Shown: in pieces, positions 2,898 through 62,123 of the stretch
How the letters are laid out: every line of letters begins with the position of its first letter
How positions within the stretch are numbered: the stretch's first letter is position 1
Sequence record: MK250017.1
Strand: one strand, 5' to 3'
DNA: 64,000 bases
Program-made: the position numbers and the translations under genes
Notes under the pieces: model-generated
The model's input: the letters and a program-made list of their open reading frames with translations, nothing else
Database searches by the model: none
What the model was told of the DNA's origin: nothing

Positions 2898-2903
2898 AAA
2901 AAT

Positions 2904-2937: not shown

Positions 2938-2953
2938 TATATTTAAATATATA

Positions 2954-4493: not shown

Positions 4494-4572
4494 AGTTTTA
4501 TATTTTATTTTTAAAAATTAAAAGGAAGATTCCAAATATATTACAATATTAGAATCTTCCTTTTATTATAAG

Positions 4573-4941: not shown

Positions 4942-4945
4942 TTAA

Positions 4946-5350: not shown

Positions 5351-5364
5351 TTTCTTTATATTAT

Positions 5365-6814: not shown

Positions 6815-6879
6815 AATTTCGAAATTATTGTTTGTTTTATTTTATACTAAATTATTTAACTTTTGTTTACTTTATTTTA

Positions 6880-9902: not shown

Positions 9903-9906
9903 AATA

Positions 9907-11017: not shown

Positions 11018-11732
11018 TTGGAAATCTATAAATTCTATCAGGATTGAGTTTCTTTCTTGTATTAATTAAAAGTTCTCGATCTTCTGGATGTTCATTTAAA
11101 TGTCTTCCATAATCATAATAACAACCGTAAATATATTGCATATGACCTATATTACATAAACCGCAATATTCTGTATGCAAACCATAATCATTTAAAAATG
11201 TTAAAATATTAATTGAACCCTGACGTCTAAAAGTATATGTAAAATCAAGCGGTGTTTTTCTTTCTTTAATAGGATTTACAATTTTCTTATTAAGACCGCG
11301 TGCTTTATAGATTTGANNNNNNNNNNNNNNNNNNNNNNNNNNNNNNNNNNNNNNNNNNNNNNNNNNNNNNNNNNNNNNNNNNNNNNNNNNNNNNNNNNNN
11401 NNNNCTTCACCTATAATAAAATTATCATCTACAAATAACGCTTCTAAAATATTAGGATTTGCCTTTACAAGTAATGATATAAATTTATTAAGTTCATACC
11501 ATTTATTATCATTTTTTGAATCTGCGATTTCTTCTTTGTATGTATTATAACCAAGAAGTTCTTTAATTGAACAAATATAAATTCCACCTGAATCTTTATC
11601 ACTTTCTGGAGTATCTAGCCCATATGAAACCGAACCCCTGATATATTCAATAAGGAGTCTTCCATCTTTTCTGATTTTATCAAATTCAGGAATTCCAACT
11701 GTTTCTGTTTTAAAATTCTTATATGATTTCAT
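11018..11732 (-). CDS. PF10127-type (Pol-beta family) nucleotidyltransferase; 3' end hidden in N gap
   Basis: RGSVSYGLDTPESDKDSGGIY matches GSxxYGxxxxxSDxD; ANPNILEALF. Confidence 0.75.
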
Positions 11733-36801: not shown

Positions 36802-37818
36802 TTAGAACTAATCTTTATAAGCATTGTATGTTGCTATAATATCTTTCAAATGAATAGTTGGGAATTTTTGTAGTTTTCTTAATATATTAATAAAATCTTC
36901 TTTACTACTCATATTAATACGATAACTACCATATCTTCCATATTGACGTGTATAAGTTTTATTATATATTTTACGTCCTAATATAATAGTTAATAATATG
37001 TCATCATTAAACTATAATTGTAAATCTTTTATATTTCTATTCTTCGCACATATAAATAAAGCTGCTAATCGTGCAACCATCTTATCTGCCTTTGTAATCT
37101 TATCAAAACCACTGAAATTTCTTGTATCTATACATTTATTCATACGGTCAATATCTTTCTGAACTACTTTATATACTTTTCCTGTACATGTTAATTCATC
37201 TGTAATTCTCTATGTATTAAATACTTGTTCAACAGATTCCATTAATACTTCACCTATCTATTTTTGATACTCATTAATATCAAAATATGTCTTATTATAA
37301 GATTCAATAAATTTATTAACTGGTGCAGTATAAGAAGAACTTTGATTAATACGTAAAACTATTTTATCATTAACATCAGGAAATTTAACACACCATGCAC
37401 GAAATTCTCTAGATTTATTTCTATATACTGCTTCGTATGGAATTATATAAATTTCAAATGTGAAACTACCACCAATAACACATTTAAAATAACAACTGTT
37501 CGCCCTTTGAACTGATATATTACGTTGTTCATTATTAAACTAATCACAATCAATAGTAAAAGGAAGTTCGCTATGTTTCTGAACAGCATACATTATATCA
37601 GTAATTGTATCCAATACATTATTAACAAGATTGTATTTATTGATGAAATATTCATTTACTTCATCTATATTATCACATTGTGCTAATGATGTAATTTTGA
37701 CATTATCATTAATCATTTGAGAAACTTCCTATGTATCAGAATCTGTATCATCAACATATATATCATTGAAATCATCATCAAATAAACTTTCGAGTAATTT
37801 CTTTATATTCTTATTCAT
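36802..37818 (-). CDS. TAG-recoded 338-aa protein with LFDD leader (absent from the ORF track)
   Basis: MNKNIKKLLESLFDDDFND; 6 TAG; TAA 36802. Confidence 0.7.
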
Positions 37819-37893
37819 ATAATAATTAAAATGTATTTTATTATTTATTTTAGATAATAATTCATGAAATATTTTTTTAATTAAAATATTATA

Positions 37894-37903
37894 TGTATCT
37901 TTG
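37894..37903 (+). promoter_or_regulatory. Bacteroidetes-type -7 promoter element
   Basis: TGTATCTTTG. Confidence 0.7.
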
Positions 37904-37933
37904 AGTCACATAATAATTAATGAATAATATAAT

Positions 37934-38308
37934 ATGGTATTAAATATAGACGATTTTGAAGTATTGAAATTTTATGGGTATACAAGTCTAATACCTATAA
38001 ATGCTCGTATTAATGAAGTGTCATCAATAGATGATAATCCTCGTGAACAGCTTCGTTATAAAAAGTTAGAATCCTTTTATAATAAGGTAATTGAAAAAGC
38101 AAAGGAAAAATGTACAAATAAAAGTTTTAAGTATTGCCATTTTGAAGATAATAAATGTGTATTTTGTTTATCACATATTAAAACAGGTCATATTATCTAT
38201 ATAGGTAAATATGATTTTGAAATATCGATTGGCCTTGATTTTAAACAGCGTTTTGGTCCATCATATAATTTTTTATTTAATAAAGAATCATATAAGAATG
38301 AAGAGTAA
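37934..38308 (+). CDS. Hypothetical protein
   Basis: 124-aa ORF. Confidence 0.55.
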   Translation: MVLNIDDFEVLKFYGYTSLIPINARINEVSSIDDNPREQLRYKKLESFYNKVIEKAKEKCTNKSFKYCHFEDNKCVFCLSHIKTGHIIYIGKYDFEISIGLDFKQRFGPSYNFLFNKESYKNEE

Positions 38309-38438
38309 AAAATTTTTATCTAATTTAAATAATATAGAAAATTGTAAGAATTCATTGTTATTTCTTGCTATCGTGTTTCTTATTATTTTAACATATGTAG
38401 GTATCATATGGTTTTCAGATTATTTGAATAATTATTAA
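38298..38438 (+). CDS. Small membrane protein
   Basis: ATG 38298, one TM segment. Confidence 0.45.
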   Translation: MKSKKFLSNLNNIENCKNSLLFLAIVFLIILTYVGIIWFSDYLNNY

Positions 38439-38450
38439 AATTAAATACGT

Positions 38451-38783
38451 ATGGTTATACATAAAGCAGAAAAATGTAATATTAATAATGTATCAGAAAA
38501 TAAAATACATGATAGTACATCAGGTTATAATAGTTTAATTATATTTTTTATCATTACTGTAATTACGACAGTTGTATATGCAATAACAGTTTATCCTGCT
38601 GCATGTTCAAGAGAATCTGTAATTACAAATAAAGATACAGAAACAAAATTTAAAATGATATTGAGAGACAAATATATTGATAATGTATTTCTTGAAAATA
38701 TTAGTCAAAATTCATGGAATTCAATAGAAGTATATGATTCAAATATGAAATCTCATAAAATTATTTGGAAAGAAGTAAAATAA
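38451..38783 (+). CDS. Small membrane protein
   Basis: 110 aa, one TM segment. Confidence 0.5.
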   Translation: MVIHKAEKCNINNVSENKIHDSTSGYNSLIIFFIITVITTVVYAITVYPAACSRESVITNKDTETKFKMILRDKYIDNVFLENISQNSWNSIEVYDSNMKSHKIIWKEVK

Positions 38784-38837
38784 TAAAGTAAAAAGAAAAT
38801 ATATTTAATAGTTATTAATTTTAATAAAAAATAAAAA

Positions 38838-40907
38838 ATGAAGAATTTTATTTTGTGTTTGCTCATTTCATTTGTGAGCGTTTTTAATTCTTATGCAGAC
38901 ACTGTAAATGATACATTGACTGCATTGAAGTTGAAGGAAGTTACCGTAACTTCTTTGTATCGAAATAATGTACAGACTGGTAGTATGATTAATACATCTA
39001 CTATTAAGATGATGAATCATGGTCAGGGTACAGATTATGTACTTTCTACATTGCCTAATATTTATGCATATAATGACAATGGTACGCAAATGGGTTATTG
39101 TTATTTCCGTATGCGTGGTATGGGTCAGGAACGTATGAATGTTACATTGGATGGAATGCCATGGAATGAAGCTGAAGATTTCGGATGTTATTTCAGTAAT
39201 TCTCCTGATCTTATGTCTAGTTTGCATTCTATTAAGGTAGAAAAGGGTGCATCAGTAACTAATAACGGTACAGCTGCATATGCTGGTAATGTTTCTCTGG
39301 AATCAGTAGATTTGAGAAAAGATACAGATTCGTGGTTTGACCTTGGTTATGGATCTTTTAATTCATCACGTGTGAGTGGAGTGTATAATATGGGTTTGAA
39401 GAACCATTGGGGATTGCATGTTCGTGCAACATCACAGCAAACTGATGGTTATAAGGAAAATACATATAATAATTCAAAGTCAATTACACTTAAGACTGGT
39501 TATTTCTTTAATGATAAGCATTCACTCGATTTCTTGACAATGACTGGTTATCATCGTAATGGTCAAGGTTTTATGGGTCTTACAGAAGATATGATTCCTA
39601 AGCATCCTACACCATTTAAGCAAATGAAGTCTGGTAATCGTCAACAGGAAACAGATGATTTCTTGACAACTTATAATAGATTTCAATATAAGGGAATTCT
39701 ATCAGATAAGGTCTTCTTGTCATCATCATTGTATTGGCAACATCAGACTGGTAATTATCGTATTGGATGGGATGATCCTTCACGACCTACTGGAAGTGTA
39801 TTGAATAATTATCATCTTAATTATAATCTTACAGGATTTAACACAGTAATTAAGTATTATCCAGCTAATAATCTTTCACTTACAACTGGTGTAAATGCAT
39901 ATGTTTATCATAGACGTCATAAGGGATATGATATTGCAAACTCTGATAGTATTATTACAGCATGGAAGAATCCAGGACTTACTCCTTATTATGATAATGC
40001 AGGAACAAAACCAGATGTAAATGTATTTGCAAATGTAAAGTATCAACCAATTAATAAGTTTACTATTGATGCTGCACTTCAATATCGTTATACATCACTT
40101 CATTATCGTGTAAATACACCAGCTATTGGTATTAATGGTGATTCTGATTTTAATCATGACTGGAATTTTATGAATTACAGTTTTGGACTTACATATGATA
40201 TTGATAAGTATTCAAAGGTATATGCACGTTATGCAGTCACAAACCGTGAACCTTCCAGAACTGATATGTTCGGCGGTGAATATCGTACAGATGAATCTGA
40301 AATGAATACAAAGTCAGAGCGCGTACATGATGTTGAACTTGGTTATGAAATTCGTAATAATAAGATTAATTTCAATATTAACGGTTTTTATATGAATTTC
40401 AGTAATGAACTTGTTGCAACAGGTGAACTTTCATCAATGAATGGTCTTCCTCTCCATAAGCAGCATGATTCATATCGACTTGGTTTGGAACTTGCGATGG
40501 ATTATAATCCTGTTAATACATTGCATCTTATTGCAAATGCTTCATGGTCAGAGAATAAGTTGAAGAACATTAATGGAAAGGAAATGAATCATACATTCTC
40601 ACCATCATCTACATTGTTTGCTGAAGCAAATTATTCTGTTAATAAGATTAAGTTCGGTGTAAATACGAATTTCCGTTCATCTATGTATATGGATATTTAT
40701 AATAATCATCAGCTTAAGGAAAACCTTACACTTAATGCATATGTTAATGCACGAGTATCAAAGATTGTAGAACTTAGTTTGAATCTTAATAATATTACGA
40801 ATCGTTTGAATTTCTCTAACGGATCAGTTGATATTCCATCAGATATAGCATATTATTTGGTTGATTCACCATTTAATATGTTTGCGACAGCTAAGTTTCA
40901 CTTTTAA
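38838..40907 (+). CDS. TonB-dependent outer-membrane receptor (vitamin/pyridine-nucleoside type)
   Basis: Signal peptide, TonB-box-like LKEVTVT, plug motif RMRGMGQERMNVTLDGMPWNEAED..VEKGA, barrel strands, C-terminal AKFHF; 689 aa. Confidence 0.9.
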   Translation: MKNFILCLLISFVSVFNSYADTVNDTLTALKLKEVTVTSLYRNNVQTGSMINTSTIKMMNHGQGTDYVLSTLPNIYAYNDNGTQMGYCYFRMRGMGQERMNVTLDGMPWNEAEDFGCYFSNSPDLMSSLHSIKVEKGASVTNNGTAAYAGNVSLESVDLRKDTDSWFDLGYGSFNSSRVSGVYNMGLKNHWGLHVRATSQQTDGYKENTYNNSKSITLKTGYFFNDKHSLDFLTMTGYHRNGQGFMGLTEDMIPKHPTPFKQMKSGNRQQETDDFLTTYNRFQYKGILSDKVFLSSSLYWQHQTGNYRIGWDDPSRPTGSVLNNYHLNYNLTGFNTVIKYYPANNLSLTTGVNAYVYHRRHKGYDIANSDSIITAWKNPGLTPYYDNAGTKPDVNVFANVKYQPINKFTIDAALQYRYTSLHYRVNTPAIGINGDSDFNHDWNFMNYSFGLTYDIDKYSKVYARYAVTNREPSRTDMFGGEYRTDESEMNTKSERVHDVELGYEIRNNKINFNINGFYMNFSNELVATGELSSMNGLPLHKQHDSYRLGLELAMDYNPVNTLHLIANASWSENKLKNINGKEMNHTFSPSSTLFAEANYSVNKIKFGVNTNFRSSMYMDIYNNHQLKENLTLNAYVNARVSKIVELSLNLNNITNRLNFSNGSVDIPSDIAYYLVDSPFNMFATAKFHF

Positions 40908-40912
40908 ATAAA

Positions 40913-40951
40913 AATGGGTGATTAAATATTCCTGATATTTAATCACCCATT
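40913..40951. terminator. Long hairpin terminator after TBDR
   Basis: aatgggtgattaaatat ... atatttaatcacccatt. Confidence 0.7.
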
Positions 40952-41014
40952 AATTATTTCATATTTATCAATAATTATAAATTAATTATAAATAAGATAA
41001 TGAAAATATAAAGA

Positions 41015-42307
41015 ATGATTTATTTAGAAAAAATGAGTAAATGGAAATTAAATGAAAATAGTATAAACGAATTTTTATGGACATGTGCAGGTGTTAATAA
41101 GAATATATTAAGATTATATCCGAGTGAATATGCAAAATATGCAGGTAGTGGAGGAACTATTTTATTTACTGCTATGATGGCATTTATATCAGGTAGTTAT
41201 GCAATGTTTTTTGTATTCAGTAATGCTATATTATCACTGATCTTTGGTATATTCTGGGCATTACTTATATTTAACCTTGACAGATTTATTGTTAATTCCA
41301 TGCATACTGATGGTAAAGACACATTAAGTTGGAAAAAGATTCAAACGGCAATGCCACGTATAATTATGGCTATATTTTTAGGTATTGTTATTTCAACACC
41401 ACTTGAAATGAAGATATTTAATGATAGAATAGAATCATAGTTACTAAAAGATAATATAGAACGAATAAATTCAGCAAAGAATGAATCATCAGATTATAAA
41501 ACAATATCATTATTACAAGCAGAATAGAACCAATTGACAAAAGATCGAAAACAACTGGTAGATGATTTACAGAAAGCATAGAAAGAACTGAAAGAAGAAG
41601 CAGAAGGAAATGCATTATCTGGTATTGCTGGGCATGGGACTATATATAGAGATAAAGAAACATATGTTAATCAATGTAAACAATCATTATAGGAATGGGA
41701 TCTTCTTCATAAAGAACGGTTGACAACTGTATAGAAACGTATTGATGAAGTTAATAAGCATATTGAAAAATTTGAAGGTAAAATAGATGGTTTAAGAGAA
41801 GATGGTTTCAGCGCAAGGTATGAAGCTTTTTCAAATCTTAAAGAAGCAAATAATTCATTAGCGATGGTATCATTCATGATAACAATGTTGTTCATTATTA
41901 TTGAAGTTACACCTACATTTTTTAAACTTATTATGACATCAGGGCCATATGAAGAACATTTATAGATAGAAAATTATAAAATAACCGCATATGTTACTAA
42001 AGAGAAAAATGGTATTGATACAGAATTAAAAATAGATGATTATAATAATAAAGAAAAATTAAAAGCTGTTATTAAACAAGATGAACCTATTATTGATGTA
42101 ACAGATGTATCAGTAAAACCTATTGTATATTCAGCTATATAGTCATTAACATTAGAATCAGAACAAGAACCTGAAGAAGTTCCATATATAAAGTCTAATA
42201 CATCTATTATAACAACACCTGTTGCAACAAAGAAATTAGAATTTAAGAAAAATGAGAAAGGACAAATTATGTTAGATTTCTCATCAAGACCTAAAAAATT
42301 AAATAAA
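41015..42307 (+). CDS. TAG-recoded DUF4407-like membrane coiled-coil protein (430 aa)
   Basis: FLWTCAG, IFNLDRFIV, PRIIMA..GIVISTPLEMKIF, IEVTPTFFKL; 7 TAG. Confidence 0.75.
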
Positions 42308-42372
42308 TGAAATAAAAATAATATCCATTAAGAAAAAAACTTAGTGGATATTTTTTTATATAAAGAATTATA

Positions 42373-42382
42373 TGTATCTTTG
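42373..42382 (+). promoter_or_regulatory. Bacteroidetes-type -7 promoter element
   Basis: TGTATCTTTG. Confidence 0.7.
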
Positions 42383-42418
42383 TATTGTAATTAAATAATA
42401 ATTTAAATAATAAAGAAT

Positions 42419-43426
42419 ATGAGTGAATTAATGTTTAAGAGTAAGAATGTAACACCACAGTTGAATACTTATGTTATTAAGGTAACAGGTAAGTATAATG
42501 ATCATCTACCATGGGAAACAAATATTATTAATGTAGAAGCAGATCGCATGAATAATTTTGTGTTGTTATTTCTTGCATATGTTGGTAACAGAAATTGGCA
42601 GCATAAATGGAAGAATTCTACATTCGGCGAGAATTTTAAGAAGGGACCACTGCAGACATATCTAGGTGCTTTTACCGAAGATACACATTATCCATGTATG
42701 GACCTTATGTGGAATGATGTTGTTTCAGTCAACATTAATTATGTTAATAATAATGGTACATACATTTTGTGTGAACTTCCTGATGTAGAAGAGCTGTATG
42801 ATACTGAGGAGGATTTCCTCAAGGAACTTAAGTCACAGTTTGATGAATTTAATAAGAATGATCCTCGTGATGTTTATGAAGATGAAGGAATTGAGATTGT
42901 TGATTCATATGAGCTTGAGCTTGTAAGAAATGTTCTTCGTTCTACTGGTAAGTGGGATAATGATGAAATTGATAATCTGTTTTGGGTTGATCGTGAGATT
43001 GGTTTTAGTTCATTGGTTGCACGTACTTCTACAGATGAAAATATTCTTAAAGTATGTAAGCAGGAACATGCTAAGAGTGCAACAGGTGTTGAGTATAATG
43101 GATTTAAACCAGAAACACTCGAAAAGATTAAGACCGCTATTAGTGGAACAAATCTTCCAGAGGAAACTAAGACATTTGTAATTGACATTTGTTCTAAGTA
43201 TAATTCAAAGAATATGTTGAGTGAATCTGAGAAGGAAGATCTTAAGAATATCATGGAAACATATAATTTGGTAAATTATTCATATGGATGGATTGGCCCA
43301 GATGGTTGGAGTGGTATTTACCTTGAGCATGTGATAGATCCAGAGATGATTGATTTCGATGATTATTCAGAGAATTCAGTTATTAAGTATGAGGGTGAAA
43401 CATATATTATTCATGAAGGAGATTAA
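42419..43426 (+). CDS. Hypothetical protein
   Basis: 335 aa, AAG/CTT-rich codon usage like the highly expressed genes. Confidence 0.65.
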   Translation: MSELMFKSKNVTPQLNTYVIKVTGKYNDHLPWETNIINVEADRMNNFVLLFLAYVGNRNWQHKWKNSTFGENFKKGPLQTYLGAFTEDTHYPCMDLMWNDVVSVNINYVNNNGTYILCELPDVEELYDTEEDFLKELKSQFDEFNKNDPRDVYEDEGIEIVDSYELELVRNVLRSTGKWDNDEIDNLFWVDREIGFSSLVARTSTDENILKVCKQEHAKSATGVEYNGFKPETLEKIKTAISGTNLPEETKTFVIDICSKYNSKNMLSESEKEDLKNIMETYNLVNYSYGWIGPDGWSGIYLEHVIDPEMIDFDDYSENSVIKYEGETYIIHEGD

Positions 43427-43429
43427 TTT

Positions 43430-43852
43430 ATGTTAATTATTCTATCAATAGTATTAATTATTGTAGGATTATTTCTTGGAATTTTAATAGGTACTTTAGG
43501 ATCATTTGGTGATTCTGAAATACCTATTAAAGAAGATAAAATAATCAAGAGATGTTTGTTATTTAATATAGCATCTCGGTGTGATAAAATTATACTTGTA
43601 TGTTGTACACCATTCGGATGGTTAGGAATTCTTTTATTATTTGTATGTTGTTTTGTATTTCAACATATTATAGGAATTATGTTTATTAGTCCTTTACCTA
43701 TGATGGAATTTCTTAATACATTTGAAGACAAAATATATAGTTTTGCACTACTATATTTAGTACCTATGTTTGGTGGTTATTTTATAGGTTATAATTATAT
43801 GAATAATTTTATTAAACGAATAGAAAAAGAAGAACATGAAGAAAGGAACTAA
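43430..43852 (+). CDS. Membrane protein (about 3 TM)
   Basis: Hydrophobic segments. Confidence 0.55.
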   Translation: MLIILSIVLIIVGLFLGILIGTLGSFGDSEIPIKEDKIIKRCLLFNIASRCDKIILVCCTPFGWLGILLLFVCCFVFQHIIGIMFISPLPMMEFLNTFEDKIYSFALLYLVPMFGGYFIGYNYMNNFIKRIEKEEHEERN

Positions 43853-44330
43853 ATTTTATGTTATATTAGGTTATAATACAGAAACAGAAGCCTGGTATGG
43901 ATATGTAGAAAATTCTTTTTCTATGGGTGCAGATAAAAATAGAATTAGAACATTTTCTACATGTAGAGCAGATTATCCTTGGAAAGATAGATCATTTTCA
44001 GAGAGAAAACGAATAGCGAAAGCATATTTGAAGAAACATGGTTATAGATGTAATTATGCTCGTGATTATATTATAGATGCAAAGATGAATCCTAATTCAC
44101 CAAATCAATGGATTTATTTTTATTTGCGAGATATTGTAGACAATCTTAATAAAAAACATTATAATAATTGTTATTGGAAAGTATATAGAGTAAATTCTAA
44201 GTTTTGTCCTATTAATGTAAATATGAATGAATATTACAAAACATTAGTAAATAAGAAATTTAGGAAGTCTCTTGACAAATTTCAATTAAGAAATCAAGAA
44301 TTTTCTGTAAAGGAAGTTTCAAAAGATTAA
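43836..44330 (+). CDS. Hypothetical basic protein
   Basis: 164-aa ORF. Confidence 0.55.
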   Translation: MKKGTKFYVILGYNTETEAWYGYVENSFSMGADKNRIRTFSTCRADYPWKDRSFSERKRIAKAYLKKHGYRCNYARDYIIDAKMNPNSPNQWIYFYLRDIVDNLNKKHYNNCYWKVYRVNSKFCPINVNMNEYYKTLVNKKFRKSLDKFQLRNQEFSVKEVSKD

Positions 44331-44337
44331 AAATATA

Positions 44338-44592
44338 TCGGTATGGCTCTAAAGGAGAGAGCATCATTTATGACTAATGATGACGAAGATTTGTTCGTAA
44401 GTTAATCTTTACTAAGAGAATATACAATATTTAGTTATATAGAAGTAATTTAATTGTTATAATGCGAAGACAATTTTATATGAAACTATATATGTCATTT
44501 ATGAGATTATAGTGAAGAATAGCATTTACAGTAACTATAATAAGATGATATAAACAATATAACTTCTGTGGTTCGATTCCACACGTACTGAC
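44338..44592 (+). ncRNA. tRNA-like RNA with 186-nt insert in the variable region (TGA at anticodon position)
   Basis: Acceptor tcggtatg/cgtactga, D stem gctc/gagc, stem tcatt/aatga with loop tatgact, T arm tgtgg-ttcgatt-ccaca. Confidence 0.65.
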
Positions 44593-44610
44593 TAATAAAC
44601 ATATAACATT

Positions 44611-44829
44611 ATGAAAGAAGAAATTAAATTCTTAGGTAAAACACCGAGAGAAATTGCAGAACGTTACTTCAATAAATCATATGAAGGTAAAGAACGATAT
44701 GATATTTTAGTTGAAGGCTTTATTGAGGGATTTAATTATCTATTTCCTCATTATGATATAGCTAATACTTTGGTTGAAACATTTGAACGAATTAAAGAAT
44801 TAGAGAATAAAGAGAAAAAAGATTCATAA
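44611..44829 (+). CDS. Hypothetical protein
   Basis: 72-aa ORF. Confidence 0.5.
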   Translation: MKEEIKFLGKTPREIAERYFNKSYEGKERYDILVEGFIEGFNYLFPHYDIANTLVETFERIKELENKEKKDS

Positions 44830-44854
44830 TTATTTTTTTAATTGAAATAAAATA

Positions 44855-44864
44855 TGTATCTTTG
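44855..44864 (+). promoter_or_regulatory. Bacteroidetes-type -7 promoter element driving the ncRNA island
   Basis: TGTATCTTTG; no ORF downstream. Confidence 0.7.
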
Positions 44865-44870
44865 TATTGT

Positions 44871-44974
44871 AAATAATGAACACCTATAAGTGTTAAGTAA
44901 CATAGGTATGGAAACCCTACGGTTCGTAAGTAGTAATATCGAATAGTCCGCATAATAGGAACATGTCATTATTT
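44871..44974 (+). ncRNA. Candidate ~104-nt structured small RNA
   Basis: 9-bp terminal stem aaataatga/tcattattt starting at the expected +1; internal cctat/atagg and ttcg/cgaa stems. Confidence 0.4.
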
Positions 44975-45014
44975 TAACATTTATATAAGAATATACTACA
45001 TGTCTTATATGAGC

Positions 45015-45355
45015 GTCAGGAGTATTGTAACAGAGTCGACGTGTTTACATTTTTAGAGGCGCAGTTTTTAAATCTGACTATTCTATGTAAAGTAGTGAAG
45101 TGCAAGATACGGCGTCAGTACAAGTCTATATAATAAGTTGCAAATAAAAATAGAAACTGTTAAAATTCGTATCTAAATTTGTCTGTATTTCACAATGGTC
45201 AATGAGGTACATGAAAAGTGATTTGGAAGAATCATTATAGACATATTATGATTAAGATAACGTTCAACTAAGCTATAGAATAATAGTAAGTATAGCGCTG
45301 AAAATATATGTTTATATGTATTGCGGTTGTGGTTCGAATCCACATACAGACACGA
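45015..45355 (+). ncRNA. ssrA: Atypical tmRNA
   Basis: gagtcgac (cf. GAUUCGAC), helix-2 pairing tattctat/atagaata, actaagctataga (cf. ACUAAGCAUGUAG), resume context taagttGCA, T arm tgtgg-ttcgaat-ccaca; about 340 nt. Confidence 0.7.
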
Positions 45356-45360
45356 CTTAT

Positions 45361-45860
45361 TAATGATGAAAAGTCTGCACTTAACAAAATATAAAAAACA
45401 TTTTAATGTACTGTTGATTATATGTTTTAATTTTGTTAAATAAGAGATTATTGTAAATTATAGAAATTTACAAATCGAGGGGAACGCATAACGGCAATTA
45501 TGTTAGTACTTGGCGTTTAATGAAATGAATATGTATATTTGCCGATATGCATATGAGTGACATTAAATGATAAAATTATAATAGTGTAGCGGTTCGCACG
45601 CCCGTTGGTAAAACGGGAAGGGTTTATGTTTGAAAGCATATTAGGGGTTCGACTCCCGCTTATAAACAATTAAATTACATAATGTTCTCACGAAGAGCGA
45701 GCATCGGAAGGTGAGCAATTTAGAAAGATGTTTAAGAGTGATCATATTAAATTGATTTCTAACAGAAATACGGTGACGTAGGAGCTGAAAAAGAACAAAC
45801 GTATGGTAATGTTAGCATTATGTATTTAAAAAATATTAGTCCTCACAGACTTTACATTTT
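45361..45860 (+). ncRNA. Candidate large ornate ncRNA with kissing loop and embedded cloverleaf
   Basis: Closing helix aaagtctg/cagacttt plus aatg/catt; at least 8 internal stems; loop-loop cggcaa/ttgccg; terminator follows. Confidence 0.6.
45575..45667 (+). tRNA. Degenerate class-II tRNA-like cloverleaf, Tyr(GTA) by loop centre
   Basis: Acceptor ttataa/ttataa, D arm gtgt/gcac, cccgt-tggtaaa-acggg, long variable arm, T loop ttcgact with only 3-bp stem. Confidence 0.45.
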
Positions 45861-45891
45861 TTATAACTTTAAAATTTTGAATTTAATATTA

Positions 45892-45925
45892 AATCCGATG
45901 CTTGTGGTAAGTATCGGATTTTTTT
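45892..45925 (+). terminator. Intrinsic terminator closing the ncRNA island
   Basis: aatccgatgctt-gtggt-aagtatcggatt followed by a T run. Confidence 0.8.
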
Positions 45926-45940
45926 AATTCATAAAAAATA

Positions 45941-45950
45941 TGTATCTTTG
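45941..45950 (+). promoter_or_regulatory. Bacteroidetes-type -7 promoter element
   Basis: TGTATCTTTG upstream of nadR. Confidence 0.7.
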
Positions 45951-45980
45951 TAATATATTAAATAATAATTAAATAATTAA

Positions 45981-47141
45981 ATGATTAAGAATATAGGAAT
46001 TTGTTTTGGTGGTTATTGTCCTATGCATCAGGGACATCTTGACCTTATAATGAAAGCAAAGAAAGAAAATGATATTTGTTATGTGGTTGTTTGTGGTTAT
46101 ACAGATGAACCACGAGGTAATGAATTAGGTCTTAATATTAATAATAGAAAAAGACTTATTAAAGAGTTTTTTAAAAATGATGAACTTATTCGAGTTCTTA
46201 CTGTAAATGATACAGAATTAGGTATTGATGAAAGTATGTCTGAACATAATTGGAAAGTATGGACAGATTATGTAAAATATCAAATTACAGATGATCTTCT
46301 AGGTGGAGGTCCGACATTTCCATTTAGTCCAGATGAAAGGATTAAAGCGCATGAATTGAAACTTACATTCTATGTTGGTGAAAAGTTCTATGTTGAATCA
46401 TTGAATAAATTAAATATTAATGCAGTGTTAGTTGGTTACGATGAGAATTCTCCATCTAATAGAAGTAATGATATATCAGCAACATATATTAGACAAAATC
46501 CTCAATATTATTGGGATAAGATTGTATCAACATTTAAACCTGCATTAACAAAGAAAATTCTTGTATTAGGTACAGCATCAGAAGGGAAATCAACACTTGT
46601 TAAAGATATTGGTAATTATTTTAATATACCATATACAACAGAATTCGGTAGGGATTATATGGAGAAACATTGTATGTTAGATCCTGATATTACTGTAAAT
46701 GATTTTGTTGAATTCCTTATTGGACAGAGACAATACTATTTTGATGCTTTGAATGATAAAGGAAATAAGGGCGTTATCATTTCAGATACAGATAATCTCG
46801 TTACACTTATGTATGCAAAAGCATATGTATCTGATAATAATATGCAAATTACTGAAGATGAATATAACAATATATTGAAACCACTTGCAAAATCATTACA
46901 AACAGGTGTTTCATGGGATGTAATTTATCTTATCAAACCGCATAATAAATTTGTTGATGATGGAACACGTTACATGAATCAATCTTCAATAGATGAGAGA
47001 ATGAAGAATTATAAAATTCTTTTATCATTACTTGAAGAGTTTGGTTTACTTGATAAAGTAATTGAATTGAATGGTTCTTATATGGATCATTTTAATTATG
47101 TTAAGGATTATATCACAAAATTATATGATAAAGAAAATTAA
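45981..47141 (+). CDS. nadR: NadR-type NMN adenylyltransferase / ribosylnicotinamide kinase
   Basis: FGGYCPMHQGH (HxGH), then Walker A GTASEGKST, EFGRDY, DTDNLVT, FVDDGTR. Confidence 0.88.
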   Translation: MIKNIGICFGGYCPMHQGHLDLIMKAKKENDICYVVVCGYTDEPRGNELGLNINNRKRLIKEFFKNDELIRVLTVNDTELGIDESMSEHNWKVWTDYVKYQITDDLLGGGPTFPFSPDERIKAHELKLTFYVGEKFYVESLNKLNINAVLVGYDENSPSNRSNDISATYIRQNPQYYWDKIVSTFKPALTKKILVLGTASEGKSTLVKDIGNYFNIPYTTEFGRDYMEKHCMLDPDITVNDFVEFLIGQRQYYFDALNDKGNKGVIISDTDNLVTLMYAKAYVSDNNMQITEDEYNNILKPLAKSLQTGVSWDVIYLIKPHNKFVDDGTRYMNQSSIDERMKNYKILLSLLEEFGLLDKVIELNGSYMDHFNYVKDYITKLYDKEN

Positions 47142-47790
47142 TAATATATTATATTCAGAGTTTATAGAAGGAAGAAATATTAATGAACATTTGTTTATGC
47201 TCATTGGTATTTTCCTTCAATTAATTGCATGGTATATAACTAAAGATTCATTAATTTCTTTAATATCGGGTGTAACTGGTATTATATCTGTTATATTATG
47301 TTCACAAAGAAAGATTTCATTTTATTTCTTTGGCTTTATACAGTTAGGAACATATATGTATCTTGCATGGCAGCAAAGATTTTATGGTGAATTAATAGAG
47401 AATGTATTTTATATTATTACTATGTTAATAGGTATTGTAGTATGGTTAAAAAATTATAATACTGAAGAACAAATAGTAGAATCTAAAAGACTTTCTGATA
47501 GGTTATTCTATATAATATGTAGTATAATGGTGTTTATCTGTGTATTATTTGGTTATTATATGAAATACTTTACAGATAATACACAACCATTTATGGATTC
47601 ATTTTCAACAGTACCTGCATTTATAGCGCAGACATTGTTAATGTTACGATATAGAGAACAATGGATATTCTGGATTATAATTGATGTTGTTTCTATATTC
47701 ATGTGGATGTTTGCTGATAATTGGATAATGGTTATTCAATTTATATTTTGGACAATGAATTGCATATATGGTTATAGAAAATGGAAATAA
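47125..47790 (+). CDS. pnuC: PnuC-family nicotinamide riboside transporter
   Basis: Multi-TM; SGVTGIISVILCSQRK, FMDSFST, REQWIFWIIIDVVSI; overlaps nadR. Confidence 0.9.
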   Translation: MIKKINNILYSEFIEGRNINEHLFMLIGIFLQLIAWYITKDSLISLISGVTGIISVILCSQRKISFYFFGFIQLGTYMYLAWQQRFYGELIENVFYIITMLIGIVVWLKNYNTEEQIVESKRLSDRLFYIICSIMVFICVLFGYYMKYFTDNTQPFMDSFSTVPAFIAQTLLMLRYREQWIFWIIIDVVSIFMWMFADNWIMVIQFIFWTMNCIYGYRKWK

Positions 47791-47805
47791 TAAAAATAAA
47801 ATAAT

Positions 47806-48051
47806 ATGACATTTGTTATTATAGTAATAGTTATTTGCTTAACTGTATATGGTATTATGGCATCTAAACATAATGCAGAAGAAAGTAAAGCATTTTGGGG
47901 TGATCATTCAGATTCATCTGATGTTAAGAAATTAAAGTCAAGAATGAAACTTTTGATTGATAGAGTAGATTTACTTGAGGAACGAATTAATAAGTTAGAT
48001 GGACAGAGTTTAAAATCAAGAATTGATAGAAAAACATTTAATAGCAATTAA
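47806..48051 (+). CDS. Small membrane-anchored coiled-coil protein
   Basis: N-terminal TM, heptad pattern. Confidence 0.5.
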   Translation: MTFVIIVIVICLTVYGIMASKHNAEESKAFWGDHSDSSDVKKLKSRMKLLIDRVDLLEERINKLDGQSLKSRIDRKTFNSN

Positions 48052-48054
48052 TAT

Positions 48055-48522
48055 ATGAAAGCAGAAAGAACAAATTTTGAAGTTTTTGATTGGATGAAAG
48101 AACATCAAAAAGAGTATAATTATAGTGATGAATTTATTAATGTATATAAGGACTGTTATTTTTTGAAACGTCTCGAAGGAAAAGTATTTAAAGGTGAATT
48201 TTGTGGATATAAAGTAACACCTGATAATTCAGATAAATCTTATTTTGTAGAAGAAGGAATTAGAGGATGTGAACGAGGATTTTTTACTGTACTTGATAAT
48301 AAACTTATTAAACTTGAATTTGATTCAGTACAGGATGAATTGTGGTTTAGTAATAAGTATAAGAAAAATGAGAATTCAATTATAGAAAAGTATATCAATC
48401 CTAAATTGAAATATCTTACAGAATTCTTGAAACTTGAAACACTTACAGATAATGAAAGAATGATGATTAATGATCATATTCAATCATTAGAGTTTATTAT
48501 TAATTCACTTTATAAAATTTAA
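48055..48522 (+). CDS. Hypothetical protein
   Basis: 155-aa ORF. Confidence 0.55.
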   Translation: MKAERTNFEVFDWMKEHQKEYNYSDEFINVYKDCYFLKRLEGKVFKGEFCGYKVTPDNSDKSYFVEEGIRGCERGFFTVLDNKLIKLEFDSVQDELWFSNKYKKNENSIIEKYINPKLKYLTEFLKLETLTDNERMMINDHIQSLEFIINSLYKI

Positions 48523-49562: not shown

Positions 49563-50612
49563 ATGAATAAACAAATCAAGCAATTGTTAGAAAATTTATT
49601 TGATGATTATGATGACTTAATATAGGATGATAATGATAATATTGAAAAAGATTCCATAGGTAAGAAAATAACTGATGAAGATATAAAGAAAAAAGTAAAA
49701 GAATGGTTGCGTTATAATATTGCATCAAGTCCAGAAAATAATAATATAGATAGAAATCTTACTTTTGAATATATTGATGACATACTTTATTGTAATTTAC
49801 ATTTTAATGGTTATATGACAGTATTTATGAGTGAAATACCTGATTATGTAAAGATTAATAAAATTACATGTAAAGATATTAAATTTAATAGTTTATATAA
49901 TTTACCGAAGGAAATAGATGGAGATATGCTTATAGATGGTTATAATCATACGAAATTAATTGGTAATTTCCCCGAAAAAATAGGTTGTTTAAAGATATGG
50001 AATTCAAAAATAAAATCATTGGAAGGACTCAATGATAATTGTGGTTCTATTGAATCATTAGAGATTGAGGCATGCAATAATTTCCAATATTTTATGGGTA
50101 TTCCAGAAAATGTAGGACGTGTTTCTATACAAGAATGTAATAAACTTCAAAATTTAATAGGATTACCAGAATCTGTTGATGATATAGAGTTAACAGATTT
50201 AAGGAAATTTTCAAGTTTAGAAGGATGTCCAAAAGAGTTAAAAGGAGATTTACGTATAACAGATTGTAAAAAATTATTATCATTAAAATATATTTCATCT
50301 TTAATCATAGGAGATTGTTCTGTTACGTATACAGGTATAGAACATCTTGATATGACTGAATCAAATACAAGAGTTATAGGAGACTTTAATGTTTCTAATA
50401 ATAAGTTAGTTGATTTAAGTAATGGACCAGAAGATGTAAGAGGTAATTATGATTGTGCATATAACTCAAAATTGACATGTTTAAATGCGCAAGATACACT
50501 TATGTCTGGATATAAGAAAACATTTGATTGTACGAAAAATAGAAGACTAAAAACATTATAGGGATTACCTATGATGATTAAAGGAGATATAATAGTAAAT
50601 ACAGATTTATAA
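49563..50612 (+). CDS. TAG-recoded leucine-rich-repeat protein 1 (349 aa) with LFDD leader
   Basis: Repeats IKSLEGL, LQNLIGLPE, FSSLEGCPKEL, LVDLSNGP; 2 TAG. Confidence 0.8.
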
Positions 50613-50699: not shown

Positions 50700-51731
50700 A
50701 TAAACTTATTAGAAAATCTATTTGATGATTATGACGATATAATATAGAATGATAATGATGATATTGGAGATGATCTTATAGCTAAAAAGTTAAAAGAGGA
50801 AGAGTAGTAGAAAGTAAAAGAATGGCTTTGTAATAATATCTCAACTAACAAATATGAAGTGTTTCTTAATAATATAGATAAATACGTTACATTTGAATAT
50901 ATTGACGGTATACTTTATTGCAATTTAGAGTTTATTGATTCTATAACAAAATTTAAAAGTCCAATACCAGATTATGTAAAGATTAATAAAATTAAAGGTC
51001 ACGGTCACATTACATTTAAGAGTTCATATAATTTACCAAAAGAAATAGAAGGAACTATGTGTATAAAAAGTAATGAGACAAAAATTATTGGTCCTTTCCC
51101 ACAAAAAATTAAAGTCTTATGTATAAAGTGCCCAAAATTAAAGTCATTAAAAGGCCTTAATGATAATTGTGTTTCTATTGGTAAATTATATATAGATAAT
51201 AGTTTGAATTTACAAGATTTAACAGGTTTACCAGATTCTGTCAACTATTTATAGTTGACTTATTGCAATTTTCCAAATTTAAAAGGATGTCCAAAACAAT
51301 TAAATGTTTTAAACATACAAGAATGTAATAAACTTGAAAACCTTATAGGATGTCCAGAAACTATTGAAAAAATAGATTTGTTAAATTTAGAAAATTTTTC
51401 AAGTTTAGAAGGATGTCCAAAACAATTAGATGGATTGGATATATGTGGTTGTGAAAAATTAAAATCATTAAAATATATTTCTCCTTTAATAGGGAAAGGT
51501 GGATTAGGTGTTTCACGCTCAGGCTTAGTTGATTTAAGTAATGGTCCAAAAGAGATAGAAGGTAATTATTATTGCAATACTAATCCAAATTTGAAACGTT
51601 TAAATGCACAAGATACAGTTATGACGGGACATGAGACTGCATTTCATTGTTATAATAATGATAGCTTAAAAAGATTAAAGGGATTACCTAAGATGAAATA
51701 CAAAGATATAAAAATAAAGACTGATTTATAA
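50700..51731 (+). CDS. TAG-recoded leucine-rich-repeat protein 2, paralog of LRR1; ATG out of frame
   Basis: Same leader and repeats; 4 TAG; 11-nt deletion after ATGAATAAAC relative to LRR1. Confidence 0.7.
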
Positions 51732-61097: not shown

Positions 61098-62123
61098 TTT
61101 ATTATAATAAAAGTATTTAATAAATGTGGACATATAAATGAAATTACAAGACAAGCAATAAACTATTACTATAGGAATAGTAATCATATATATTGTAATA
61201 AGTGTGAATATAAAGAATTAACATATAGGAGTAATTTTGAAAAAGATGTTGTTAAAGAAATAGGAAATATTATAAAAGAAACTAACTATTCTATTATAAC
61301 AAATAAACATATTTATAATGGTAAAGAACATTTTGAAGTTGATATATTAATTCCTGAATTAAATTTAGCAATAGACTGNNNNNNNNNNNNNNNNNNNNNN
61401 NNNNNNNNNNNNNNNNNNNNNNNNNNNNNNNNNNNNNNNNNNNNNNNNNNNNNNNNNNNNNNNNNNNNNNNNNNNNNNNNNNNNNNNNNNNNNNNNNATG
61501 ATATTTATAAGAAAGACATTATATTAAGCCGTTTATCTAGTAAATTAAAATTAAATAAACATATATATGCAAGAAAATGTTTAATTAAAGAATTGACTCC
61601 TAAATTATATAGGGATTTCTGTAATGAAAATCATTTACATGGATCTGTTAATGCTTCAATAAAAGTAGGATTATTTTTTAATGATGAGTTAGTTGAAGTA
61701 ATAGGTTTAGGTAAATCTCGTAAATTAATAGGTAATAATAAAGAAGAAGTTTCATATGAATTATTACGTTTATGTACAAAGAAATATATTAACGTTATAG
61801 GTGGTTTTTCTAAATTAATGAATTATGTTATTAATAAGTTTAATATAAATTTAATATATAGTTATGCAGATTTATCATGGATAGATTTAAAAGGAACATC
61901 ATACATTAATAGTGGATTTTATATAGATAAAGTTATTGATAATGAATATTGGTGGGTTGTAAACAATATACGAGAGAATCGATTGAATTATACAAAGAGT
62001 AAATTGGTATCATTAGGGTATGATAAGCATTTAACAGAAATTGAAATAATGCATTCTTTAAAGTATTATAGAATATTTGGTCCTGGAAATTTAAAATTTA
62101 TATATAAAAAGAAAAGTCTCTAA
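61098..62123 (+). pseudogene. Hef-like homing endonuclease, apparently 5'-truncated (no ATG; partly masked)
   Basis: Open frame KCGH..CNKC..EVDILIPELNLAID in frame with FCNENHLHG, YELLRLC, GGFSKL, SYADL. Confidence 0.6.

What the first reader, a model, noticed from the sequence alone, without database searches (positions are those of the whole stretch)
38838..47790. Phage-encoded outer-membrane-to-NAD+ salvage route: TonB-dependent receptor + PnuC + NadR
Seen: an intact 689-aa TBDR, and 5 kb away an overlapping nadR-pnuC pair. All are TAG-free and lie downstream of host-type promoters, so they are translatable early. Established: PnuC imports nicotinamide riboside and NadR phosphorylates and adenylylates it to NAD+. 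Bacteroidetes pair TBDRs with Pnu-type transporters for vitamin uptake. NAD+-depleting defences (Thoeris, Sir2-type) are countered by phage NAD reconstitution pathways. Inference: a complete import-based NAD+ rebuilding pathway. PnuC/NadR are known in some phages; the TBDR component is the unusual part. The TBDR could instead carry thiamine or mediate superinfection exclusion.
Basis: partly seen in the sequence, partly recalled or inferred. Interest (0 to 1): 0.75.

Follow-up and report, generated by a model that had tools for sequence, protein, structure and literature searches.

The report
Megaphage three-gene nicotinamide riboside import route
A giant gut phage (Lak-A1, which infects Prevotella) carries an outer-membrane transporter, an inner-membrane transporter and an enzyme that together should bring in a vitamin B3 precursor and turn it into NAD+, and the three genes are neighbours in almost every related phage and bacterium examined.

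Summary
The window is Prevotella megaphage Lak-A1, which reads TAG as Gln. It encodes an intact 689-aa TonB-dependent transporter (TBDR, 38838-40907) and, 5 kb downstream, overlapping nadR (45981-47141) and pnuC (47125/47071-47790). All three are free of in-frame TAG.

- **Co-occurrence:** TBDR homologues lie within 6 kb of a nadR and/or pnuC homologue in 73 of 77 assessable Bacteroidota genome loci and 50 of 51 viral-contig loci. This includes the three largest published phage genomes.
- **Phylogeny:** the Lak TBDR falls in this NR-linked clade. Its sister clade includes a thiamine-type TBDR that has a TPP riboswitch.
- **Intact parts:** the model shows a plug and a full TonB-dependent-transporter barrel. 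NadR and PnuC keep their catalytic and family motifs. All three genes are under purifying selection.
- **Host:** full-length NadR is rare in the host family (3 of 170 species), so the phage probably supplies a route the host lacks.

PnuC plus NadR is already known as the phage system NARP3. The Lak TBDR has also been noted in the literature, but I found no paper that links it to NR. I classify this as a new variant of a known kind. The substrate, the expression timing and any anti-defence role remain inferred.

The parts
37891..37903 (+). Promoter-like motif ATATGTATCTTTG, which contains the Bacteroidetes -7 box TAnnTTTG. It heads the transcription unit that ends with the TBDR.
   Evidence: There are 9 sites with at most 1 mismatch in the window against 0.77 expected. 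All are intergenic and point toward a TAG-free gene, a tRNA or an ORF-free stretch.
37934..38308 (+). ORF of 124 aa, function unknown, first gene of the TBDR unit. Found only in Lak phages.
   Evidence: Homologues occur only in Lak-type loci. No family match.
38451..38783 (+). ORF of 110 aa with one hydrophobic segment ending in a Cys. It could be a membrane-anchored protein or a lipoprotein. Found only in Lak phages.
   Evidence: Translation. Conserved only in Lak-A and Lak-B. dN/dS is 0.60. The lipoprotein reading was made by eye and was not tested.
38838..40907 (+). TonB-dependent outer-membrane transporter, 689 aa. It has a signal peptide, a TonB-box-like segment, a plug, a full TonB-dependent-transporter barrel and a C-terminal Phe. 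It belongs to the TBDR clade linked to pnuC and nadR.
   Evidence: fold and domains. (gene neighbourhood). (trees). dN/dS is 0.14.
40913..40951 (+). Terminator-like hairpin with an 18-bp stem and a T-rich tail, directly after the TBDR stop codon.
   Evidence: A contig from an RNA library (X14) runs from 37943 to 40913 and ends there.
45938..45950 (+). The same promoter-like motif, about 30 nt upstream of the nadR start codon.
   Evidence: It is preceded by a terminator-like hairpin at 45891-45921.
45981..47141 (+). NadR-type bifunctional enzyme: an N-terminal NMN adenylyltransferase domain and a C-terminal NR kinase domain, with no DNA-binding domain.
   Evidence: TIGR01526 E 3e-56. PRK08099 aligns only to its positions 64-408 of 411. 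phrog_3462 E 6e-63. L. lactis NadR 6GYE E 8e-50, with the HxGH-type, SATxIR, Walker A and Walker B segments conserved.
47125..47790 (+). PnuC nicotinamide riboside transporter. The likely start is 47125; the longest ORF starts at 47071. It overlaps the end of nadR.
   Evidence: TIGR01528 137 bits against a cut-off of 42. phrog_1880 E 7e-42. N. mucosa PnuC 4QTN E 3e-25. The WxxW(x)3D motif is present.
41015..45980 (+). A Lak-specific insert of about 5 kb that is not part of the conserved module. It holds a 431-aa membrane and coiled-coil ORF with 7 in-frame TAG codons, four TAG-free ORFs (335, 140, 164 and 72 aa) and an ORF-free stretch with tRNA-Tyr.
   Evidence: The ORFs tested by tblastn (431 and 335 aa) have homologues only in Lak loci. 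In relatives the TBDR abuts nadR.

Best explanation
Lak-A1 encodes a route that spans the cell envelope and turns external nicotinamide riboside (NR) into NAD+.

**Proposed steps.**
1. The TBDR is inserted into the host outer membrane and is powered by the host's TonB system. It takes up NR, or a close pyridine nucleoside.
2. PnuC lets NR cross the inner membrane by facilitated diffusion.
3. NadR traps it by phosphorylating it to NMN, then adenylylates NMN to NAD+.

**Gene organisation.** The genes form two transcription units: ORF124-ORF110-TBDR and nadR-pnuC. Both units sit behind the same promoter-like motif, and neither needs TAG recoding to be read.

**Why the phage brings the whole route.** NadR-type salvage is rare in the host family. 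The phage therefore probably installs a route the Prevotella host lacks, which would explain why it carries its own outer-membrane component.

**Likely purpose.** The route would keep NAD+ high in the infected cell. This could refill pools drained by NAD+-depleting defences, as shown for the two-gene NARP3 system. It could instead feed the phage's own NAD+ users; I cannot tell which.

**Status of each claim.**
- Shown here: gene identities, the TBDR fold, intact motifs, purifying selection, conserved gene linkage and clade placement.
- Inferred: the TBDR substrate, its membrane location, TonB coupling, expression timing and biological purpose.
For: **Gene linkage.**
- TBDR homologues lie next to nadR and/or pnuC in 73 of 77 assessable bacterial loci and 50 of 51 viral loci.
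- In gut huge-phage relatives at 42-47% identity, the TBDR is followed directly by nadR and then pnuC, with the TBDR and nadR overlapping by 4 nt.
- The 735-kb, 642-kb and 635-kb uncultured phage genomes carry TBDR-pnuC-nadR.
- Two gene orders exist: T-N-P in gut phages and T-P-N in bacteria and environmental phages.
- The Lak NadR matches L. lactis NadR far more strongly (173 bits by phmmer) than it matches the NadR of the Bacteroidota operon, where tblastn gives 22-30% identity and E 1e-5 to 1e-18.
- This points to linkage that arose more than once.

**Neighbours confirmed.** In a Prevotella MAG and in Zobellia, the genes beside the TBDR are PnuC (above the curated cut-off) and a bifunctional NadR.

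**Trees.**
- The NR-linked clade has SH-aLRT 99.
- The Lak TBDR lies inside it, in an all-viral subclade with support 100.
- The thiamine-type clade is its sister.

**Integrity.**
- The TBDR model and Foldseek matches support a complete transporter.
- NadR motifs are intact, as is the PnuC family motif.
- dN/dS between Lak-A and Lak-B is 0.14, 0.17 and 0.20 for the three genes.
- All 15 Lak genomes keep a full-length TBDR.

**Host context.**
- Full-length NadR was found in 3 of 35 species of the reference MAG's genus and 3 of 170 species of its family.
- No TonB C-terminal domain was found in the Lak-A1 genome.

**Other NAD+ genes in Lak-A1.** The genome also has a NAMPT-like gene and an NAD-dependent ligase-like gene.

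**Precedent.** NARP3, a phage PnuC plus NadR pair, restores NAD+ against Sir2-HerA (PMC13464706).

**Expression hints.**
- Contigs from RNA libraries cover the TBDR unit and break at the predicted boundaries.
- A preprint reports transcription of the TBDR in a related Lak phage.
Against: - No ligand has been measured for any member of this TBDR family. Fold matches to solved transporters are at 12-16% identity and say nothing about the substrate.
- NR is small and might cross the outer membrane through porins, as it does in Haemophilus.
- The TBDR could carry NMN, NAD+ or another pyridine compound rather than NR.
- In Lak itself the TBDR lies 5 kb from nadR-pnuC, in a separate transcription unit.
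- Four bacterial loci with enough flanking sequence show no pnuC or nadR. Two of them are the top-scoring bacterial hits.
- TIGR01528 is also passed by the thiamine-linked Pnu protein (75 bits). NR specificity of the Lak PnuC therefore rests mainly on its coupling to nadR.
- Some IMG/VR contigs at about 30% identity may be bacterial rather than viral.
- The RNA evidence comes from assembled contigs and cannot prove transcription.
- The host-family survey was centred on one 'Prevotella sp.' MAG, not on the actual Lak host.
Confidence: 0.78

Rival explanations
1. The TBDR mainly remodels the cell surface. Once in the outer membrane of the infected cell, it masks or displaces host receptors, or acts as a decoy. 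This would block superinfection by other phages. Its position near nadR-pnuC would be incidental.
For: A 2026 preprint on huge-phage outer-membrane proteins proposes this role. It notes that Lak phages also encode OmpA-like and OmpX-like barrels, and cites lambda Lom as a precedent. TBDRs such as FhuA are common phage receptors and appear among the fold matches.
Against: An exclusion role predicts no specific gene partner. Yet more than 120 loci across bacteria and several phage lineages pair this TBDR clade with pnuC and/or nadR. Free-living bacteria keep the same pairing, and exclusion is not at issue there. The plug, the TonB-box-like segment and the barrel are conserved under purifying selection, as expected for a working transporter. 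A secondary exclusion effect is not ruled out.
Confidence: 0.08
2. The TBDR imports a different nutrient, such as iron or heme (its original 'iron complex outer membrane receptor' annotation) or thiamine, and is functionally unrelated to nadR-pnuC.
For: [quoted passage not shown] The best NCBIfam hits are weak matches to siderophore-type models, and the top fold matches are siderophore transporters. Bacteroidetes do pair a TBDR (OMthi) with PnuT for thiamine.
Against: - The family-model hits are partial and far below the curated cut-offs (35 bits against 800).
- The thiamine-type TBDR, which has a TPP riboswitch, forms the sister clade and does not contain the Lak protein.
- No TPP riboswitch was found in the window region or in 14 bacterial loci.
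- The conserved neighbour is NadR, an enzyme specific to NAD+ synthesis.
Confidence: 0.05
3. The three-gene route is real, but it supplies general metabolism rather than countering defences. It would sustain NAD+ for the long replication of a 540-kb genome, for example for the NAD-dependent ligase and for host redox metabolism.
For: Lak-A1 encodes an NAD-dependent ligase-like gene and a NAMPT-like gene elsewhere in its genome. Jumbo phages commonly carry both NAD+ synthesis genes and NAD+-consuming genes (PMC11662467). Bacteria keep the same operon purely for nutrition. NadR is rare in the host family.
Against: The two-gene version has been shown to rescue phages from Sir2-HerA (PMC13464706). 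The two purposes are not exclusive. Nothing in the sequence separates them.
Confidence: 0.45

Closest known systems
NARP3, the phage PnuC-like plus NadR-like two-gene NAD+ reconstitution pathway (Bas30_87/Bas30_86; Sci Adv 2026, PMC13464706)
   Same: It pairs an NR transporter with a bifunctional NR kinase and NMN adenylyltransferase that lacks a DNA-binding domain. The two genes are adjacent, with nadR before pnuC.
   Different: NARP3 has no outer-membrane component and is described mostly in phages of Enterobacteriaceae. The Lak NadR is only about 24% identical to those of T5-like Salmonella and Escherichia phages. The Lak clade and other phages of Bacteroidota add a dedicated TBDR.
OMthi plus PnuT, the thiamine uptake pair of Bacteroides thetaiotaomicron (reviewed in PMC6977713)
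   Same: It has the same two-membrane logic: a TBDR in the outer membrane and a Pnu-family facilitator in the inner membrane, followed by metabolic trapping. On the tree, the thiamine-type TBDRs are the sister clade of the NR-linked clade.
   Different: The thiamine loci carry a TPP riboswitch and no NadR. The Lak-type loci carry NadR and no TPP riboswitch.
The bacterial TBDR-pnuC-nadR operon of Bacteroidota (found here in Chitinophaga, Mucilaginibacter, Flavobacteriales, Saprospiraceae, Prevotella, Dysgonomonas, Porphyromonas and Capnocytophaga)
   Same: It has the same three functions. Its TBDR is 30-34% identical to the Lak protein over the full length and lies in the same clade.
   Different: The bacterial gene order is T-P-N. 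The bacterial NadR and PnuC are only about 20-30% identical to the Lak proteins. I found no paper in the held library that describes this operon or its TBDR.
Outer-membrane barrels encoded by huge phages (bioRxiv 10.64898/2026.10.24.761521) and the original Lak description (Devoto et al. 2018/2019)
   Same: These papers report a TBDR of this kind in Lak phages, evidence that it is transcribed, pnuC in Lak genomes, and, in passing, NMN-transporter genes near 22-stranded phage barrels.
   Different: In the passages I retrieved by term search, they do not assign a substrate, do not link the TBDR to NadR or NARP3, and favour a role in receptor interference.

Membership tests
TonB-dependent outer-membrane transporter | N-terminal plug domain (Pfam PF07715) followed by a TonB-dependent receptor barrel (PF00593) | tested here: met
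   A cluster representative 99% identical to the Lak protein carries both Pfam domains. The secondary structure of the model shows the plug followed by the barrel strands.
TonB-dependent outer-membrane transporter | Complete TonB-dependent-transporter barrel enclosing the plug | tested here: met
   The AlphaFold model has pLDDT 86.6 and pTM 0.84. Foldseek gives TM 0.74-0.79 and E down to 2e-41 against Fiu, PqqU, FyuA, YncD and FecA. I did not count the strands myself; a preprint calls the TBDR of a related Lak phage 22-stranded.
TonB-dependent outer-membrane transporter | Signal peptide, TonB box near the mature N-terminus, and a C-terminal aromatic residue | tested here: inconclusive
   By eye, the sequence has a hydrophobic leader, an L-x-E-V-x-V-x-S segment that also appears in the family consensus, and a final Phe. 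No predictor was run, and interaction with TonB was not tested.
TonB-dependent outer-membrane transporter | Transport powered by TonB-ExbB-ExbD | not testable with these tools
   No TonB C-terminal domain was found in the 541-kb Lak-A1 genome, so the host system would have to be used.
NR-linked TBDR clade of Bacteroidota and their phages (defined here) | Falls in the clade whose members neighbour pnuC and/or nadR, and not in the thiamine-type sister clade | tested here: met
   The clade has SH-aLRT 99, and the window's TBDR lies in an all-viral subclade with support 100. The 134-row tree agrees.
NR-linked TBDR clade of Bacteroidota and their phages (defined here) | pnuC and/or nadR within a few kb on the same strand | tested here: met
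   In the window, nadR starts 5.1 kb downstream on the same strand. In relatives the genes abut. Overall counts are 73 of 77 and 50 of 51 loci.
NR-linked TBDR clade of Bacteroidota and their phages (defined here) | Binds and transports nicotinamide riboside | not testable with these tools
   No member has been characterised in the papers I could search.
NARP3 (phage PnuC plus NadR) | PnuC-family transporter with the family motifs | tested here: met
   TIGR01528 137 bits; 4QTN E 3e-25; the WxxW(x)3D motif and the terminal gate Trp residues are present.
NARP3 (phage PnuC plus NadR) | Bifunctional NadR-like enzyme with intact kinase and adenylyltransferase motifs and no HTH domain | tested here: met
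   The alignment to L. lactis NadR covers both domains, with the Walker A, Walker B, HxGH-type and SATxIR segments conserved. The PRK08099 alignment starts at model position 64.
NARP3 (phage PnuC plus NadR) | The two genes form one operon | tested here: met
   The genes overlap by 17 nt (or 71 nt for the longest ORF). One promoter-like motif lies upstream of nadR.
NARP3 (phage PnuC plus NadR) | Restores NAD+ and rescues the phage from NAD+-depleting defence | not testable with these tools
   Shown only for Bas30 in E. coli.
OMthi/PnuT thiamine uptake system | TPP riboswitch upstream, and membership of the thiamine-type TBDR clade | tested here: not met
   No Rfam match in window 37700-48200 at E up to 0.1. 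The riboswitch-bearing TBDR of genome G002 falls in the sister clade.

The most novel reading that the evidence does not exclude
An undescribed family of TonB-dependent transporters specific for nicotinamide riboside may exist across Bacteroidota. Huge phages of these hosts appear to have captured it, or joined it to PnuC and NadR, more than once. The result would be a self-contained NAD+ precursor import system spanning both membranes. It would give the infected cell a pathway that most hosts lack, and would act as an outer-membrane-equipped NARP3 against NAD+-depleting immunity. It would also be the first phage-encoded TBDR with an assigned substrate.
Probability: 0.4. Interest if true: 0.8.

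Novelty: new variant of a known kind. Interest (0 to 1): 0.62.

Why it matters
- It gives a testable substrate and role for a phage-encoded TonB-dependent transporter. Until now these have only been catalogued.
- It extends the newly described NARP3 counter-defence logic from Enterobacteria phages to megaphages of the dominant gut phylum Bacteroidota. There, nutrient entry typically depends on TonB-dependent transporters.
- It points to a bacterial TBDR family for vitamin B3 precursors that I could not find described. That matters for understanding how B vitamins are shared in gut communities.
- It suggests that Lak phages change what an infected Prevotella cell takes from the gut lumen.

Tried and rejected
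- **Sequence search of the TBDR against solved structures:** no hit. Fold search was needed instead.
- **PHROGs:** no family for the TBDR or for most neighbouring genes.
- **Sigma-70 promoter scan:** no better than shuffled sequence (91 found, 94 expected).
- **Two-box Bacteroidetes promoter pattern** (TTTG, 17-21 nt, TAnnTTTG): also at chance level (5 found, 4.2 expected). Only the longer motif is meaningful.
- **Rfam on the region:** nothing found, not even the ARAGORN tRNA.
- **Neighbouring ORFs as module parts:** I tested whether the small ORFs upstream of the TBDR or the genes between the TBDR and nadR belong to the conserved module. They are Lak-specific, so I rejected this.
- **Pairwise BLAST of the Lak PnuC** against bacterial PnuC and PnuT: does not discriminate (24% and 22% identity).
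- **NadR homologue search:** returned only unnamed metagenomic relatives and did not reveal an origin.
- **Nicotinamidase (PncA) model:** not found in Lak-A1.
- **Whole-genome file:** none is held for this window.
- **RNA evidence:** limited to assembled contigs over 37850-43840.
- **Complex prediction:** not used, because no protein-protein contact is claimed.

Full report
**Identity of the window.** Positions 38000-48000 are 100% identical to Prevotella phage Lak-A1 (MK250015, 541,664 bp). They are 98% identical to Lak-A2 and Lak-C1 and about 80% identical to the nine Lak-B genomes. GC content is about 25%. Reading TAG as Gln raises coverage by ORFs of at least 100 aa from 66% to 87% and lengthens many frames. 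This fits the code reported for Lak phages. Masked N stretches lie at 650-11404 and 61379-61497, away from the finding. I did not touch them.

- The TBDR ORF (38838-40907, 689 aa) is open under the standard code.
- Direct NCBIfam hits to TBDR models are weak and partial. However, a cluster representative 99% identical to it carries the Pfam Plug and TonB_dep_Rec domains. Full-length homologues number in the hundreds (769 at E ≤ 1e-5; 1,301 at E ≤ 1e-10).
- A model built from 38 homologues has pLDDT 86.6 and pTM 0.84. It shows a plug followed by the barrel strands.
- Foldseek matches Fiu, PqqU, FyuA, YncD, FhuA and FecA at TM 0.74-0.79, but at only 12-16% identity.
- By eye, the sequence has a signal peptide, an L-x-E-V-x-V-x-S segment that recurs in the family consensus, and a C-terminal Phe.
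- NadR (45981-47141) matches the NadR model TIGR01526 (E 3e-56) and phrog_3462.
- NadR also matches the biochemically characterised L. lactis NadR (6GYE, E 8e-50). The nucleotidyltransferase, Walker A and Walker B segments are conserved. It lacks the N-terminal DNA-binding domain.
- PnuC matches TIGR01528 at 137 bits (cut-off 42), phrog_1880, and the N. mucosa PnuC structure (E 3e-25). It keeps the WxxW(x)3D motif.
- Lak-B homologues align from residue 18 and more distant ones from about residue 41, so the true pnuC start is probably 47125.

**Is the TBDR tied to pnuC and nadR?** This was the open question, and the evidence is strong.
- The nearest TBDR relatives outside Lak (42-47% identity) sit on contigs of 300-470 kb that look like phage genomes. 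There the TBDR is followed at once by nadR and pnuC. In two of the three contig families the TBDR and nadR overlap by 4 nt.
- A scan of one genome per prokaryote species returned 80 loci at 30-34% identity over the full length. Nearly all are titled as Bacteroidota. The few exceptions carry other labels and look misassigned.
- In 73 of the 77 loci with enough flanking sequence, a nadR and/or pnuC homologue lies within 6 kb. Both are present in 54 loci, and 53 of those have the order TBDR-pnuC-nadR.
- Family scans confirmed PnuC and a bifunctional NadR next to the TBDR in a Prevotella MAG and in Zobellia.
- In IMG/VR viral contigs, 50 of 51 assessable loci show the linkage.
- The three largest published phage genomes (735, 642 and 635 kb) also carry TBDR-pnuC-nadR.

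**Is it a thiamine or iron receptor?**
- In the Prevotella-like genome G002, the best match to the Lak TBDR (E 1e-87, full length) lies beside pnuC and nadR.
- The second-best match in that genome (E 1e-59, partial) lies beside a second Pnu-family gene and behind a TPP riboswitch (66 bits). It is therefore the OMthi/PnuT-type thiamine system.
- On an IQ-TREE tree, the NR-linked sequences, bacterial and viral, form one clade (SH-aLRT 99). That clade is sister to the thiamine-type clade. The Lak protein sits in an all-viral subclade with support 100. A 134-row FastTree agrees.
- No TPP riboswitch was found in the window region or in 14 bacterial NR-type loci.
- The original 'iron complex receptor' label rests on generic family similarity.

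**Origin of the module.**
- Gut huge phages, including Lak, use the order TBDR-nadR-pnuC. Their NadR matches Lactococcus NadR at 173 bits (phmmer).
- Against the NadR of the Bacteroidota operon, tblastn gives only 22-30% identity and E 1e-5 to 1e-18.
- The environmental huge phages keep the bacterial order. Their PnuC and NadR are 32-38% identical to the Prevotella-MAG proteins.
- I infer that the linkage was captured whole in some phage lineages and assembled from separate sources in others. Independent assembly is itself an argument for functional coupling.
- In Lak, a Lak-specific insert of about 5 kb now separates the TBDR from nadR.

**Expression signals.**
- The motif ATATGTATCTTTG contains the Bacteroidetes -7 box. 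It occurs 9 times with at most 1 mismatch against 0.77 expected. Every copy is intergenic and points toward a TAG-free gene, a tRNA or an ORF-free stretch.
- Copies lie at 37891 (heading ORF124-ORF110-TBDR) and at 45938 (heading nadR-pnuC).
- Hairpin terminators follow the TBDR (40913-40951) and precede the nadR promoter (45891-45921).
- 18 of the window's 57 genes contain in-frame TAG. If the three genes used TAG for Gln at the rate seen in recoded genes (36%), the chance of having none would be 5e-4, 0.018 and 0.012. They belong to the class readable with the standard code. That this means early expression is a hypothesis from the literature, not something shown here.
- In four runs recorded as RNA libraries, assembled contigs cover the TBDR. 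In one pig-gut run, a single contig spans 37943-40913, which is exactly the predicted unit. Neighbouring contigs break at the next predicted boundaries. Contigs cannot prove transcription, and DNA carry-over is possible.
- A preprint reports transcription of the TBDR in a related Lak phage.

**Selection and host context.**
- dN/dS between Lak-A and Lak-B is 0.14 for the TBDR, 0.17 for NadR and 0.20 for PnuC.
- All 15 Lak genomes keep a full-length TBDR.
- No TonB C-terminal domain was found in the Lak-A1 genome.
- Full-length NadR was found in only 3 of 35 species of the reference MAG's genus and 3 of 170 species of its family. The survey was centred on one MAG rather than on the true host.
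- Outside the window, Lak-A1 has a NAMPT-like gene (407 bits, apparently in two pieces) and an NAD-dependent ligase-like gene. NadR could therefore also finish nicotinamide salvage.

**Comparison with what is known.**
- PnuC plus NadR in phages is NARP3, shown in 2026 to rebuild NAD+ against Sir2-HerA.
- pnuC in Lak was noted in 2018.
- NAD+ gene clusters in gut jumbo phages were surveyed in 2024.
- The TBDR of a related Lak phage, its transcription, and the presence of NMN-transporter genes near some 22-stranded phage barrels were noted in an October 2026 preprint, which favoured receptor interference.
- Three searches of the held library found no paper linking a TonB-dependent transporter to nicotinamide riboside.
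- What is new here is the assignment of the TBDR to a specific clade coupled to pnuC and nadR. It makes a three-tier version of NARP3 suited to the Bacteroidota envelope.

**Verdict.** The substrate, the timing and the anti-defence purpose remain inferences.

Noticed in passing
window 44330-45980: This is a 1.65-kb stretch with no ORFs. It holds the one tRNA called by default (tRNA-Tyr, 45575-45667) and two more tRNA-like 3' ends with GGTTCGAnTCC T-arms, near 44571 and 45329, which were not called. With introns allowed, ARAGORN proposes an intron-bearing tRNA with anticodon tta at about 44946-45353. Rfam finds nothing here, not even the tRNA-Tyr. Two copies of the promoter-like motif (44852, 45529) point into this stretch.
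   Followed up: partly
window 13528, 14733, 16169 (- strand); 21915, 37891, 42370, 44852, 45529, 45938 (+ strand): A conserved promoter-like element: a T-run, about 12 nt, then ATGTATCTTTG, placed 28-36 nt before start codons. Every copy lies upstream of a TAG-free gene, a tRNA or the ORF-free stretch. It may mark the transcription class that can be read with the standard code.
   Followed up: partly
window 41015-42310: A 431-aa ORF for a membrane and coiled-coil protein with 7 in-frame TAG codons and a TGA stop. It sits between TAG-free units. The TBDR terminator lies upstream of it, and its own terminator-like hairpin (42320-42352) follows it. Recoded and standard-code genes are therefore interleaved at the scale of single genes.
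   Followed up: partly
outside the window: MK250015 209599-210870 and 207994-208290; 332963-334915: Lak-A1 has a NAMPT-like gene that scores above the curated cut-off but appears in two pieces about 1.3 kb apart, with one TAA inside the match. This could mean an insertion or intron. The genome also has an NAD-dependent DNA-ligase-like gene. Together with NadR, these would give a second route to NAD+, from nicotinamide, and one NAD+ consumer.
   Followed up: partly
L070 (Prevotella sp. MAG) and L081 (Dysgonomonas sp.): The TBDRs of these two genomes are nearly identical (tree branch lengths 0.019 and 0.032), although NCBI places the genomes in different families (Prevotellaceae and Dysgonomonadaceae). 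This suggests recent transfer of the operon or a misassigned contig.
   Followed up: no
L007, L024, L052, L075: These contigs carry TBDRs of this clade but are labelled Clostridia, Staskawiczbacteria, Marinamargulisbacteria and Thalassovita. L007 has Lak-like nadR and pnuC (about 50% identity) and is probably a huge-phage contig placed in a bacterial bin. The others are probably misbinned Bacteroidota or phage fragments.
   Followed up: no
L001 12399-12971; L003 6288-6887: Formate/nitrite transporter family genes (PF01226) lie within a few kb of the TBDR-nadR-pnuC cluster in two unrelated gut huge-phage contigs. These phages may gather transporter genes in one region.
   Followed up: no
window 49563-50612 and 50859-51731: Two neighbouring ORFs, each with in-frame TAG, give weak partial matches (E about 1e-5 to 1e-6) to EspK/GogB-type effector models and to phrog_2028. 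The matches are too weak to name a function.
   Followed up: no
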